From Salpingoeca rosetta (lineage: Eukaryota; Protista; Choanoflagellata): 64,000 nucleotides of DNA. This document shows, one piece after another, positions 3,001-6,926 of the stretch (position 1 is the stretch's first letter; each line of letters opens with the position of its first letter). The stretch spans positions 1,737,665-1,801,664 of the forward strand of contig JAWQFM010000005.1 of NCBI GenBank assembly GCA_033442325.1. Reading direction: 5' to 3'. Below the pieces are notes generated by a model, which saw nothing but the letters and a program-made list of their open reading frames with translations, had not been told where the DNA came from and did no database searches. The position numbers and the translations under genes were made by a program.

Positions 3001-6000
3001 TACAGTTCATGTGTGCCAGCTTGTGAAAGCCCTGTGTGTGTACGTACGCGTGTTGTGTACGCGTGTTGTGTACGTGCGCGCATCTGTGTGTGTGTGTGTG
3101 TGTGTGTGTGTGTGTGTGTGTGTGTGTGTGTGTGTGTGTGTGTGTGTGTGTGTGTGTGTGTGTGTGTGTGTGTGGCCCTTGTGCGTGTTTGGGCGATTCT
3201 GAGAGCGGGCGTGCATGTGCGTGCTTGTTGTCCACTCACCGCGTTGTAGTTCCAAACGATGGGAAGGTAGGAGTTGGTGGCAATCTTGCTCGTCGCTTTG
3301 GGCAGCTGGAATGTCACTTGCGCTGAATTTGCAACAACGCAAACGCGTGTGAGTATGCAAGTTACATGTATGTGCGTTCATGTGTGAGCACAGAGACAGA
3401 GACAGAGAGAGAGAGACACACACACACACACAGACAGACGGAGAGATGATGATGATGATGATGATGACGACGACGACGTGATGATAAAGCAGTCACGTCG
3501 CCTCAACCCGCATAGCCAGGAAGAGTTATGAGTTATGAGTTGAAGCACAAGGTAAGGCAAATACCGCGGGTGGCGATCGACTTGTAGCATTTCTCCGGGC
3601 ACTGGCCGTCAAAGGCGTCCTGCCAGCGCTCGCACTCATCGCAGTAGTAGCACGAGGAGCTGCGCGCGTGATGTGGTGTCGGTGCGGCACGCGTGAGCAA
3701 CACGGCACAAAACCAAAACCAAAACGAACCGAAACAAAAACGATGTGTGGATGGTGACATGCACCAGGGAGAAGCATCCAGTCATACAAGAGTTCGAAAA
3801 GGGTGCAACACGCAAGTGCATGTGCACGCACTAGATGTCGCAGTAAGTGGTGGCTGAGCAGACTTCGTGGGCCTTGCACGCCAGGCTCTTCTGGATCTGA
3901 AAGTAGCCCTGTTGTTGGTGTGGGGTGTGAACACGAGTGTGTGCGCGAGTGTGTGTGCGAATGTGTGTGGGGGGGGGGGTTTCAGAAAACATGGAATTCA
4001 GTCTCAACAAATTCGACAGCACGGCGTCCTATCCCCCCCCCACACACACACAACAAACCAGAACAACAAAACAGAGCCAAGACAATGGTATGTTTGTTAT
4101 GTTGCTTCGCACGTTTGTTGGGACGAGGCCGACAATCTGAGAGGAGGCGATGCTGGTGATGGTGATGTAGTAGGAGCCGGAAGGATAGTAGCGAGACACA
4201 GGCCACGTGAACTTGGTGACGCCCGTGTCAGACACGCGCACAAACTGCTGGATTGTGCGGAAGGCCTTTGTGTTCTCGCCCTGTTTGTTTGTTTGTTTGT
4301 GATGGTGCAAGTGTTGATGTTGTTGTTGTTGTTGTAGATGTTGTTGTTGTTGTTGTTGTTGTTGTTGTAGTTGTTGTTGTTGTTGTTGTTGTTGTTGTTG
4401 TTGTAATTGGTGGTGAGGTGTGGCGAATCTTGAGACAAAACGCGACGAGGAAAAATCTGCCAATTACAGTGCGCGTATCCCCTCGCCCAAACAACAGCCA
4501 TCATTACCTCCTTCCAAACACACACACACACACACAAGGTCGCACGTATTCATACACACGCAGACGCATTGACACGCGAAACCAACCCGCTTGTAGAGCT
4601 CGATGTTGACGGCGGGGCCGACGTTCTCGGTCTTGAACTCAATCGTCTGCAGCGTGCCACCAACAACGGTGGAACCTGCACCCAAGCACACCCGGGACGA
4701 GTGAGATGTCGTGTTAGGGAGGAGGGGATTGTGGTAAGCACAAGCAACACGCGTCAACTTGCAATGGTTGACCCAGACACCTTTCTATCGCGAGCGATGT
4801 ACACACCACACACACACACACTCGCCACACACTCACACGTGCGCACACGCATGCACGCACGCAACACGCCGCATTCGCGACACGCTTCAAACTCAAAATC
4901 ACAGCATGCTCTCCCTTGCAGGGTGTGTGCGTGCAGCGCCCGGCGCAAGTCACCCAGCATGGAAAGGTGCAAGGAACCGCTTTGGCGGGTGTCACGGACC
5001 TTCTGCCGGGGTGATGCCTTCAATGGTGCCGCCGAGGCATGGGCAGTAGCCGCCAAGCGCAACGTCCACGCCCTCCATCGCACACACGCTGCAAGCCTGA
5101 CACTCTTGGTCTGCATGGTGGTGTAAAGTCAGAGAGAGTGTATGTGTGTGTTTGTGTTTGTGTGTGTATGTGTGTTTGTGTGTGTGTGTGTGTGTGTGAG
5201 CGTGGGTTGGGAGGAAGAGGACGAGGCCAACGTCACGGAACGAGCATGCACACTGCACACACACACACATACAGTCAGAACACACACACACACACATGTA
5301 CAACGCACTCTGGCCGCAGAACTGCGTGGTGAGACATTCGACGTGGGACTGGCACACGGAACCTGTGCATGGAAACGCGAAGTGAACACCAACAAAAAAA
5401 AAAAAAAAAAGTCAAGACCGTGAGCACGAGAACCAAAGGAGAGGTGGGGCGTTGTTGTTGTTGTTGTTGTTGTTGTTGTTGTTGTTGTTGTTGTTGTTGT
5501 TGTTGATGTTGTTGTTGTTGTTGTTGTTGTTGTTGTTGTTGTTGTTGTTGTTGTTGGTGATGATGATGAAGCCGTGACAGTCAAACAGCAGCCATGGCAC
5601 CACAGTGGCACTACAGTGAGTAACGGCAAAGCAGGAAGCGCGGGTAACATACGTCGTTCGCGTTTGACGTCTGCACAAGCCGTGTTGCAGTGACCTGTCA
5701 AACAAGGCAACACAAGGAGGAAGAGAAGGGGGGTTGGCGCAGGCGTGTGAGGTGTAGAGATGAGTGCAATGGACGACTCAAGAGTGGGGCAGCCTCGGCA
5801 ATACAATGGCGCACCCATGGCAAACCCCCGGTTGCTTTCGCCTTGAGTTACAAGGGGTCAACGCAGTTGCGGCACCAAAACACCCAAACATAACAATCTG
5901 TGCGTGTTGTGCTGTGTTGTGTTGTGTTGTGTTGTGTTGTGTTGTGTGTGTGTGTGTGTGTGTGTGTGTGTGTGTGTGTGTGTGTGTGTGTGTGTGTGTG

Positions 6001-6926
6001 TGTTGTGGTGTGGTGTGTAGTGGTGTGTGGCGTCGCACCGTTGATGAGGTCATCAATGTAGTTGGCGGCGATGCCACGGCACTGCCAGCGTGTCGTGTCA
6101 CGCTCGATGGCGCTGCACGCCTCATCGGCGAGGTTTGCGGCCGCCTCGGGCGACAGGGCCTCAGCAACATTGGAGCGGCTCAGGATGTGCTACACGTACG
6201 TGCGAAGGTGCAGGAGAGTATGCCGGGATACGTGTGAACCAACGAAGTAAGAACTGCGGTCAACAGCGCAGCATTCAACCCGTCGCACCAGAAATCAACG
6301 GAAACAACAAAGTAATGCAACCCTCAACCGACTGGCGACCCCAACCAACCGACAAGGCAACAACGAACCAACAGACAACCGCATACACACACAGGCACAC
6401 ACAGAGGCGCTTGAACGCACCTCACAGATGGCACAGGAGTCCTCGGATGGCTGTGCGTAGAACGGAACGACACCCTCCGAGCTGTTGGAAACAAATGTGA
6501 TGTGAGATGCGGCAGAGGGTTGACACATGGCAGGCTGCAGTGTCCACAGAACAAACACAACAGAATTGCAGTCGAGTGCGCACATGGGTGACTCGAAGGC
6601 GTTGGCGGCGTTGGCAATGGCATCGGAGATGTTCTGCGATTGGAAATCACGGTGGCGGGTGAGGGTGCAGCGAGCGAGCGAGAACAGCGAACGTAGTGAT
6701 GGCTATCTGAGGACACACACGCACACACGCCGTTCACACACGCCGTTCACACACGCACACACGCCGTTCACACACACACACACAAACATACCAGAAACGT
6801 GTCGGATGGCATTGGAGGCTTGATGATGCCTTCTTGTGGACGAGCGTGTGTCGCAGGCACTGCAACGAGTGCCACAAAGACACCAAGAAGCAGTGCGAGC
6901 ACACTCGCTGCCCGCCCAGCCATCAT
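1..6926 (-). CDS. Hedgling-family cadherin, 5' part (runs off the left edge): signal peptide - saposin-B-like - Cys-rich x3 / Ig-like x2 - Hedgehog N-terminal domain - vWA - beta-sandwich - cadherin repeats
   Basis: Hand-spliced, phase-consistent GT-AG exons: 6926-6792, ~6702(or 6633)-6584, 6481-6421, 6189-6039, 5694-5653, 5362-5309, 5110-5000, 4675-4587, 4280-4113, 3908-3832, 3659-3565, 3322-3240, 2924-2817, 2584-2483, 2250-2052, 1737-<1. Starts MMAGRAASVLALLLGVFVALVAVPATHA (signal peptide). The large exon encodes [12 protein letters not shown]...[15 protein letters not shown] (Hh-N), DLVFLLDGSGSI...GQTYT...VLTDG...VFAIGVG (vWA, MIDAS intact) and FSIDATTGAVSIARPLDHE...VIDVNDNAPVF (cadherin). 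The ORF track misses this exon because its stop lies outside the window. Exons above 5362 are less certain. Confidence 0.9.
1319..2076 (-). other. Hedgehog N-terminal signalling (Hedge) domain within the hedgling
   Basis: [82 protein letters not shown] is colinear with Shh [79 protein letters not shown] (alignment from memory). Confidence 0.92.

What the first reader, a model, noticed from the sequence alone, without database searches (positions are those of the whole stretch)
5309..6926. Hedgling with a saposin-B-like prodomain followed by a furin-type cleavage site
Seen: phase-consistent splicing joins a signal peptide to SCAICEHILSRSNVAEALSPEAAANLADEACSAIERDTTRWQCRGIAANYIDDLINGHCNTAC (six Cys, CxxC start, C-x6-Y-x-D-x-L as in SapB), then KRERR|SV, and continues in frame to Hh-N/vWA/cadherin. 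Established: SapB domains bind or extract lipids; animal Hedgehog is lipidated through the Hint domain, which hedglings lack; hedglings are usually described with Hh-N at the N-terminus; S. rosetta rosette formation is induced by bacterial lipids. Inference: this could be a lipid-sensing or lipid-presenting surface protein, or a precursor that sheds a saposin-like peptide, linking lipid binding to a pre-animal Hh domain.
Basis: partly seen in the sequence, partly recalled or inferred. Interest (0 to 1): 0.85.

Follow-up and report, generated by a model that had tools for sequence, protein, structure and literature searches.

The report
Hedgling N-terminal six-cysteine helical module
A giant choanoflagellate "hedgling" surface protein really does start with a small helical six-cysteine module followed by a protease-type cutting motif, but no test run here shows that the module is a lipid-binding saposin.

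Summary
RNA contigs from two independent studies, plus stranded raw RNA reads, join the minus-strand exons from the ATG at 6926 into one open frame. The frame runs through the signal peptide, the six-Cys segment, KRERR|SV, about 360 further residues, and then HH_signal, VWA and Cadherin. More than 11 kb of TNFR_c6 repeats follow beyond the window. No run covers the alternative 5897 acceptor.

The saposin reading is not supported:
- Pfam SapB_1 and SapB_2 miss the segment, yet they find canonical saposins elsewhere in this genome.
- Alignment to those saposins scores no better than shuffles.
- The C4-C5 and C5-C6 spacings are 15 and 3, against 24-25 and 5-7 in the canonical copies.
Exon 4 alone models as a helical hairpin at modest confidence.

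RERR|S is a consensus proprotein-convertase motif lying between two disulfide modules, and the genome encodes kexin/furin-type convertases. Cleavage itself is unproven, and no orthologue N-terminus could be reached.

Verdict: a real hedgling variant with an N-terminal extension. The lipid link is speculation.

The parts
6927..7036 (-). 5' UTR part of exon 1
   Evidence: The X4 RNA contig is laid up to 7036. An in-frame TAG lies 30 nt upstream of the ATG.
6792..6926 (-). Exon 1 coding part: start codon, signal peptide (about residues 1-28) and the start of a linker
   Evidence: Translation shows a hydrophobic core followed by THA|RP. RNA pieces cover 6796-7036 in X4 and 6796-6885 in X6.
6584..6633 (-). 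Exon 2 (residues 46-62), Ala-rich segment with an N-I-S sequon
   Evidence: The joint 6481/6584 is listed. The 54 nt unaccounted for in both contigs equal 4 nt of exon 1 plus this 50-nt exon.
6421..6481 (-). Exon 3 (residues 62-82), ending in C78-A-I-C81-E
   Evidence: Joints 6189/6421 and 6481/6584 are seen in X4 and X6.
6039..6189 (-). Exon 4 (residues 83-132): helices 2-3 of the six-Cys module, with C107 and C119
   Evidence: RNA pieces cover 6037-6189. The AlphaFold2 model of this exon alone has helices at 8-11, 14-28 and 34-49 with pLDDT 67.
5653..5694 (-). Exon 5: H-C135-N-T-A-C139-A-D-V-K-R-E-R plus the first base of R147
   Evidence: A 42-nt piece is laid at 5651-5692 in X4 and X6. Translation.
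5309..5362 (-). Exon 6: completes R147, then S-V-C and the start of the first 8-Cys module
   Evidence: Inferred. Exactly 52 unlaid nt lie between neighbouring pieces in both X4 and X6. The exon has GT..AG borders and keeps the frame open.
5675..6435 (-). Six-Cys helical module, from the C78 codon to the C139 codon (spliced across exons 3-5)
   Evidence: Cys positions and spacings 2, 25, 11, 15, 3. No Pfam family matched.
2052..5110 (-). Exons 7-15 (residues 165-508): three 8-Cys modules interleaved with two beta-rich segments
   Evidence: Joints, model. No Pfam hit at exon level. The exon 15 module is conserved at 49% identity in relative L015.
1..1737 (-). Exon 16 (runs off the window): HH_signal, VWA, Cadherin, then TNFR-type repeats
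   Evidence: Pfam: HH_signal 4.5e-15, VWA 1.2e-40, Cadherin 3.9e-9. Downstream ORFs match TNFR_c6.

Best explanation
Shown. This is the 5' part of one giant hedgling-family gene of a choanoflagellate. Its product has a signal peptide and a linker of about 48 residues. Next comes a compact six-Cys module (residues about 75-142), of which the exon 4 part models as helical. Then comes the motif R-E-R-R|S in a 10-residue linker between two disulfide modules. Three 8-Cys modules with two beta-rich segments follow, then Hh-N, VWA and cadherin repeats, and a very long TNFR-type repeat array.

Inferred. The six-Cys module is a small disulfide-stapled helical cap of no recognised family. It is nicked or removed at RERR|S by a kexin/furin-type convertase in the secretory pathway. 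It would then act as an N-terminal propeptide or a shed peptide that controls when the ectodomain becomes active. This follows the logic of furin-removed cadherin prodomains, without being homologous to them.
For: - One transcript and one open frame.
- Pfam domains downstream of the module.
- Exon 4 models as a helix-loop-helix with C107 and C119 flanking the loop.
- RERR|SV fits R-x-[KR]-R. It is one of only two such motifs in 1087 residues, against about 0.15 expected, and it sits between C139 and C150.
- The genome encodes convertases: three or four P-domain loci, one open frame carrying Peptidase_S8 plus P_proprotein.
- The other two 8-Cys modules are not preceded by basic sites.
- Furin removal of cadherin prodomains is established knowledge; papers on it are listed.
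Against: - No cleavage data exist.
- The second R-x-R-R motif lies inside the folded Hh-N domain and is conserved in orthologues, so the motif alone does not prove cleavage.
- No orthologue N-terminus could be obtained, so conservation of the module and the site is unknown.
- The fold of the whole module was not predicted.
- Pfam gives no Cadherin_pro hit for the 74-residue six-Cys segment or for exon 1.
Confidence: 0.42

Rival explanations
1. The module is a divergent saposin-like (SAPLIP) domain that binds, extracts or presents lipids, either on the surface protein or as a shed peptide.
For: - The first three Cys spacings (2, 25, 11) match canonical saposins of this genome (2, 26-27, 9-10).
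- A C-x6-aromatic motif opens helix 3 in both.
- The exon 4 part models as helical.
- The Cys pairing 1-6, 2-5, 3-4 is geometrically plausible.
Against: - Pfam SapB_1 and SapB_2 do not hit the 74-residue segment even at E <= 10.
- They also miss it in the six-frame genome scan that does find canonical saposins on C32, C19 and C2.
- Pairwise z-scores are at most 1.5 against Cys-fixed shuffles.
- C4-C5 is 15 residues rather than 24-25, and C5-C6 is 3 rather than 5-7, so helix 4 is almost missing.
- PDB sequence search and Atlas feature search of exon 4, and Foldseek on the exon 4 model, gave nothing.
Confidence: 0.2
2. The module is a permanent N-terminal cap or adhesive tip that is never cleaved. 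KRERR is then only a basic linker, perhaps glycan-binding or simply there by chance.
For: - A second R-x-R-R motif sits uncleavably inside Hh-N.
- Basic patches are common in Hh-type proteins.
- No cleavage evidence exists.
Against: The motif is a full consensus with Ser at P1'. It lies in a short inter-module linker, and convertases are encoded in the genome.
Confidence: 0.3
3. The 5' exons form a separate small gene or an assembly chimera, and the hedgling starts nearer to Hh-N.
For: A contig spanning two genes does not by itself prove one transcript.
Against: - Fifteen canonical introns keep a single frame open for 1721 codons.
- Two studies give the same joints.
- There is zero depth at the alternative 5897 acceptor.
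- No stop or poly(A)-type end was seen between the parts.
Confidence: 0.04

Closest known systems
Hedgling family (Hh-N + VWA + cadherin proteins of choanoflagellates, sponges and cnidarians)
   Same: HH_signal sits immediately before VWA, followed by cadherin repeats and TNFR-type Cys-rich repeats. This matches the description in PMC4054682.
   Different: About 480 mature residues precede Hh-N, whereas the papers read describe Hh-N as amino-terminal. The extension has no Pfam match. As reported for hedglings in PMC6027127, the Hh-N here appears, by eye, to keep the His but lack the Asp and the second His of the zinc site.
Saposin-like proteins (Pfam SapB_1 / SapB_2)
   Same: Six Cys in a helical context, a C-x2-C start, a C3-C4 loop of 11 residues, and C-x6-aromatic at the start of helix 3.
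   Different: No profile match and no pairwise similarity above shuffles. The C-terminal half is shorter by about 10 residues, and the last pair is C-x3-C rather than C-x5-7-C.
Classical cadherin prodomain removed by furin
   Same: An N-terminal module after the signal peptide of a cadherin-repeat protein, ending in an R-x-[KR]-R motif.
   Different: No homology: Cadherin_pro gave no Pfam hit. The module here is about 65 residues, helical and Cys-rich rather than cadherin-like. The first cadherin repeat lies about 830 residues downstream. Cleavage is untested.

Membership tests
Hedgling | [quoted passage not shown] | tested here: met
   HH_signal at residues 5-138 and VWA at 149-333 of the exon 16 translation.
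Hedgling | Cadherin repeats after the VWA domain | tested here: met
   Cadherin at 467-554 (E 3.9e-9).
Hedgling | Large transmembrane protein | not tested
   The gene runs more than 11 kb beyond the window through TNFR_c6 repeats and a 100-N assembly gap. The 3' end was not reconstructed.
Hedgling | Hh-N at the amino terminus | tested here: not met
   Hh-N starts near residue 510 of the spliced product.
Saposin B-type (SAPLIP) | Match to the SapB_1 / SapB_2 profiles | tested here: not met
   no family at E <= 10; this locus is not among the hits, although canonical copies are found.
Saposin B-type (SAPLIP) | Six Cys spaced about 2 / 26-27 / 9-10 / 24-25 / 5-7 (values read from this genome's own saposins) | tested here: not met
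   Here the spacings are 2 / 25 / 11 / 15 / 3. The first half fits and the second half does not.
Saposin B-type (SAPLIP) | Four- or five-helix bundle closed by 1-6, 2-5 and 3-4 disulfides | not testable with these tools
Exon 4 alone gives a helical hairpin with pLDDT 67, and Foldseek found nothing for it.
Saposin B-type (SAPLIP) | Lipid binding or membrane activity | not testable with these tools
   Needs a bench assay.
Proprotein-convertase substrate | R-x-[KR]-R motif in the lumenal part of a secretory protein | tested here: met
   R144-E-R-R147|S, downstream of a signal peptide.
Proprotein-convertase substrate | Convertase present in the organism | tested here: met
   P_proprotein loci; the L017 open frame carries Peptidase_S8 plus P_proprotein.
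Proprotein-convertase substrate | Cleavage observed, or site conserved in orthologues | not testable with these tools
   All orthologue contigs end at or just upstream of the exon 15 orthologue.
Cadherin prodomain (Cadherin_pro) | Profile match | tested here: not met
   no Pfam family on the 74-residue six-Cys segment or on exon 1; exon 2 was not scanned.

The most novel reading that the evidence does not exclude
The module is a truncated, highly divergent saposin-type lipid binder. A convertase releases it from a pre-animal Hh-domain surface protein, so lipid handling and an Hh domain were already coupled in one precursor before animals, by a route different from Hint-mediated cholesterol addition.
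Probability: 0.08. Interest if true: 0.75.

Novelty: new variant of a known kind. Interest (0 to 1): 0.35.

Why it matters
Hedglings are the only large non-animal proteins that carry an Hh-type domain, and the papers read describe that domain as their N-terminus. Here a transcript-supported extension of about 480 residues precedes it. The extension includes an unclassified helical six-Cys module and a consensus convertase site. If the site is used, the mature protein differs from its textbook drawing and a small disulfide-rich peptide is released. This could be tested in a genetically tractable choanoflagellate. Without fold or cleavage data, it remains an annotation refinement of a known family rather than a new mechanism.

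Tried and rejected
It was not sent to any other tool afterwards.
- Retrieving the organism's own full-length protein. The representative search returned cadherin/VWA giants and one exon-level orthologue. The word-index search is limited to 667-2121 residues and gave only the exon-level orthologues P0151 and P0025.
- Searching for fragments with exon 4 padded to 113 residues: no candidate.
- Searching with the exon 15 module: nothing.
- JGI metagenome scans with an Hh-N/VWA alignment and with exon 4: no relatives.
- Orthologue contigs from one Logan run and four ENA metagenome assemblies, one of them a TARA record. Four break in a tandem repeat about 150-270 nt upstream of the exon 16 orthologue. 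The fifth (L015) reaches only the exon 15 orthologue.
- None of the 173 fetched proteins resembles the N-terminal 508 residues.
- No paralogue of exon 4 exists in the genome.
- PDB sequence search and Atlas feature search of exon 4, and Foldseek on the exon 4 model: no meaningful match.
- A weak Pfam DUF7463 hit on exon 4 (E 0.17) is treated as noise.
- Literature: no paper holds both 'hedgling' and 'saposin', and the genome paper's supplements hold no hedgling table.
- Rejected: the alternative 5897 acceptor / separate-gene idea, because depth there is zero and the frame is continuous.
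Full report
**Where and what.** The window is contig C5:1737665-1801664 of a 55.4-Mb, 68-contig genome. Its size and hedgling content match the Salpingoeca rosetta genome described in PMC4054682. The feature lies on the minus strand.

**Checking the splice model.**
- I laid two raw RNA-seq runs and two sets of RNA contigs on 1500-7400. 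One 9475-nt contig (X4) runs from 7036 to 1500 and continues 7.5 kb further. It skips segments whose ends read CT..AC on the plus strand, which is GT..AG on the minus strand.
- Short contigs of an independent 2011 study (X6) show the same joints.
- Raw reads of X22 support seven downstream joints. Their first mates lie on the plus strand, as expected for a minus-strand RNA in a stranded library.
- After resolving the stated cut ambiguities, the model has 15 introns, all GT..AG. A single frame is open from the ATG at 6926 for 1721 codons. An in-frame TAG lies 30 nt upstream of the ATG.
- The joints 6421/6189 and 6584/6481 are listed directly.
In X4, 94 nt lie between the pieces at 5110 and 6037. 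That equals the 42-nt piece laid at 5651-5692 plus 52 nt, exactly the remainder of a 54-nt exon 6. In X6, 262 = 139 + 42 + 52 + 29.
It is flanked by repeats that the tool skips, so it is inferred.
- Depth is zero at 5834-6030 in all four runs, so the alternative 5897 acceptor is not used in these data.

**The protein.**
- Residues 1-28 are a typical signal peptide.
- Residues 29-75 are a linker with an Ala-rich stretch and one N-I-S sequon.
- Cys residues lie at 78, 81, 107, 119, 135 and 139, giving spacings 2, 25, 11, 15 and 3.
- K143-R-E-R-R147 is followed by S-V-C150. The last Arg codon is split by intron 5.
- Three 8-Cys modules follow, each C-x5-C-x5-C-x5-C-x2-C-x2-C-x10-12-C-x1-3-C. Two beta-rich segments lie between them.
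- Exon 16 holds HH_signal (4.5e-15), VWA (1.2e-40) and Cadherin (3.9e-9).
- The large open frames downstream, beyond the window, are TNFR_c6 arrays.
- The gene is therefore a hedgling-type gene as defined in PMC4054682. However, its Hh-N starts near residue 510, whereas PMC4054682 and PMC6027127 describe it as amino-terminal.

**Is the six-Cys module a saposin?** The tests I could run do not support it.
- Pfam finds no family in the 74-residue segment at E <= 10.
- Six-frame scans of the whole genome with SapB_2 and SapB_1 find canonical saposins on contigs C32, C19 and C2 above the curated cut-offs, but not this locus.
- Those canonical copies have spacings C-x2-C-x26-27-C, C3-x9-10-C4, C4-x24-25-C5 and C5-x5-7-C6. 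The module fits the first three spacings and shares C-x6-aromatic at the start of helix 3. It is about 10 residues short between C4 and C5 and ends in C-x3-C.
- Local alignments to the canonical copies score no better than shuffles that keep the Cys in place (z at most 1.5).
- The PDB sequence search, the Atlas feature search of exon 4, and Foldseek on the exon 4 model gave nothing.
- The decisive test, a model of the whole domain, could not be run. I did not send that peptide to any other tool afterwards.
- Exon 4 alone (50 residues) models as a helix-loop-helix with pLDDT 67. This shows a helical character and places C107 and C119 on either side of the loop, but nothing more.
- I therefore rate a true saposin-type fold at about 0.2-0.25, and lipid binding lower still.

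**The basic site.**
- R-E-R-R|S-V is a full R-x-[KR]-R consensus with Ser at P1'.
- At this protein's composition the motif is expected about 0.14 times per 1000 residues. It occurs twice in 1087 residues.
- The second copy, K-R-L-R-R, lies inside Hh-N and is invariant in two orthologues. This warns that the motif alone does not mean cleavage.
- The first copy sits in a 10-residue linker between C139 and C150, between two separately disulfide-bonded modules. That is a typical position for convertase sites.
- The genome has three or four P-domain loci. One open frame carries Peptidase_S8 plus P_proprotein.
- Cleavage is plausible (about 0.4-0.5) but not shown.

**Relatives.**
- Exon-level orthologues exist in marine metagenome assemblies (P0151 cluster: 65% identity over the whole exon 16 query, 71-76% over Hh-N/VWA) and in one Logan run (P0025: 51-59%).
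- The Logan contig also carries the orthologue of the exon 15 8-Cys module (49% identity, all Cys kept). One metagenome contig begins with the last codons of that exon and a GT donor.
- At least the proximal part of the extension is therefore conserved beyond this species.
- Four of the contigs break in a tandem repeat about 150-270 nt upstream of the exon 16 orthologue. The Logan contig (L015) reaches only the exon 15 orthologue. None reaches the six-Cys region.
- Further searches with exon 4 or exon 15 found nothing, and the genome has no paralogue of exon 4.
- Conservation of the module and of the basic site is therefore unknown.

**Most likely mechanism.**
- Shown: one secreted or membrane precursor with the order signal peptide, helical six-Cys module, convertase consensus, Cys-rich and beta modules, Hh-N/VWA/cadherin, TNFR array.
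- Inferred: the module is an N-terminal cap that a kexin/furin-type enzyme nicks or removes, as happens with cadherin prodomains. That process is established knowledge; papers on it are listed. There is no homology between the two.
- Rivals: a true divergent saposin; a permanent cap with a merely basic linker; or, very unlikely, a separate gene.

**Novelty and score.**
- The gene family and its presence in this organism are known (PMC4054682).
- What is new is the transcript-supported N-terminal extension with an unclassified helical six-Cys module and a convertase consensus. No paper in the library holds both 'hedgling' and 'saposin'.
- This is a new variant of a known kind. The lipid link that motivated the high first-stage score has no support, so I score interest at 0.35.

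Noticed in passing
window 2052-5362 (-), spliced residues 148-508: There are three copies of an 8-Cys module (C-x5-C-x5-C-x5-C-x2-C-x2-C-x10-12-C-x1-3-C), interleaved with two beta-rich segments. None has a Pfam hit at exon level. The exon 15 copy modelled at pLDDT 63. Its best, non-significant Foldseek rows were the single TNFR-type domain of BCMA (E about 2).
   Followed up: partly
window 1-1737 (-), Hh-N domain: By eye, the Hh-N keeps the His of the S-L-H motif but has Arg where Shh has the zinc-binding Asp, and has no His at the H-I-H-C position. This agrees with the incomplete peptidase motif reported for hedglings in PMC6027127. A basic K-R-L-R-R motif is invariant in two orthologues.
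   Followed up: partly
window 5111-6791, introns 1, 4, 5 and 6: These introns are packed with microsatellites: (AC)30 in intron 4; two (CAA) runs of 48 and 54 nt plus T17 in intron 5; and TG/CA runs in introns 1 and 6. RNA reads with loose ends and odd joints at 4041-4058, 4801-4822 and 6713-6730 look like cross-mapping from similar repeats elsewhere.
   Followed up: partly
L005 and L004 (window coordinates about -1900 to -11500): The gene continues for more than 11 kb as arrays of TNFR_c6 repeats in several large open frames. A 100-N assembly gap lies at L005 428-527, so public gene models of this locus may be broken there.
   Followed up: partly
L020-L023 (ENA metagenome contigs, one a TARA record), first 150-270 nt: An uncultured marine relative carries an orthologue that is 65% identical over the whole exon 16 query and 71-76% over Hh-N/VWA. 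All four assemblies break in the same (CTCTCGAC)-type tandem repeat in the intron upstream of the Hh-N exon.
   Followed up: yes
window 6394-6395: RNA reads with the first mate on the minus strand read CA instead of GG inside intron 3. They probably come from another locus or an antisense or repeat transcript.
   Followed up: no
G000 C32:391353-392528, C19:168417-168524, C2:1515740-1515805: Canonical saposin domains of this genome, above the Pfam cut-offs. The C32 locus looks like a multi-domain prosaposin.
   Followed up: partly
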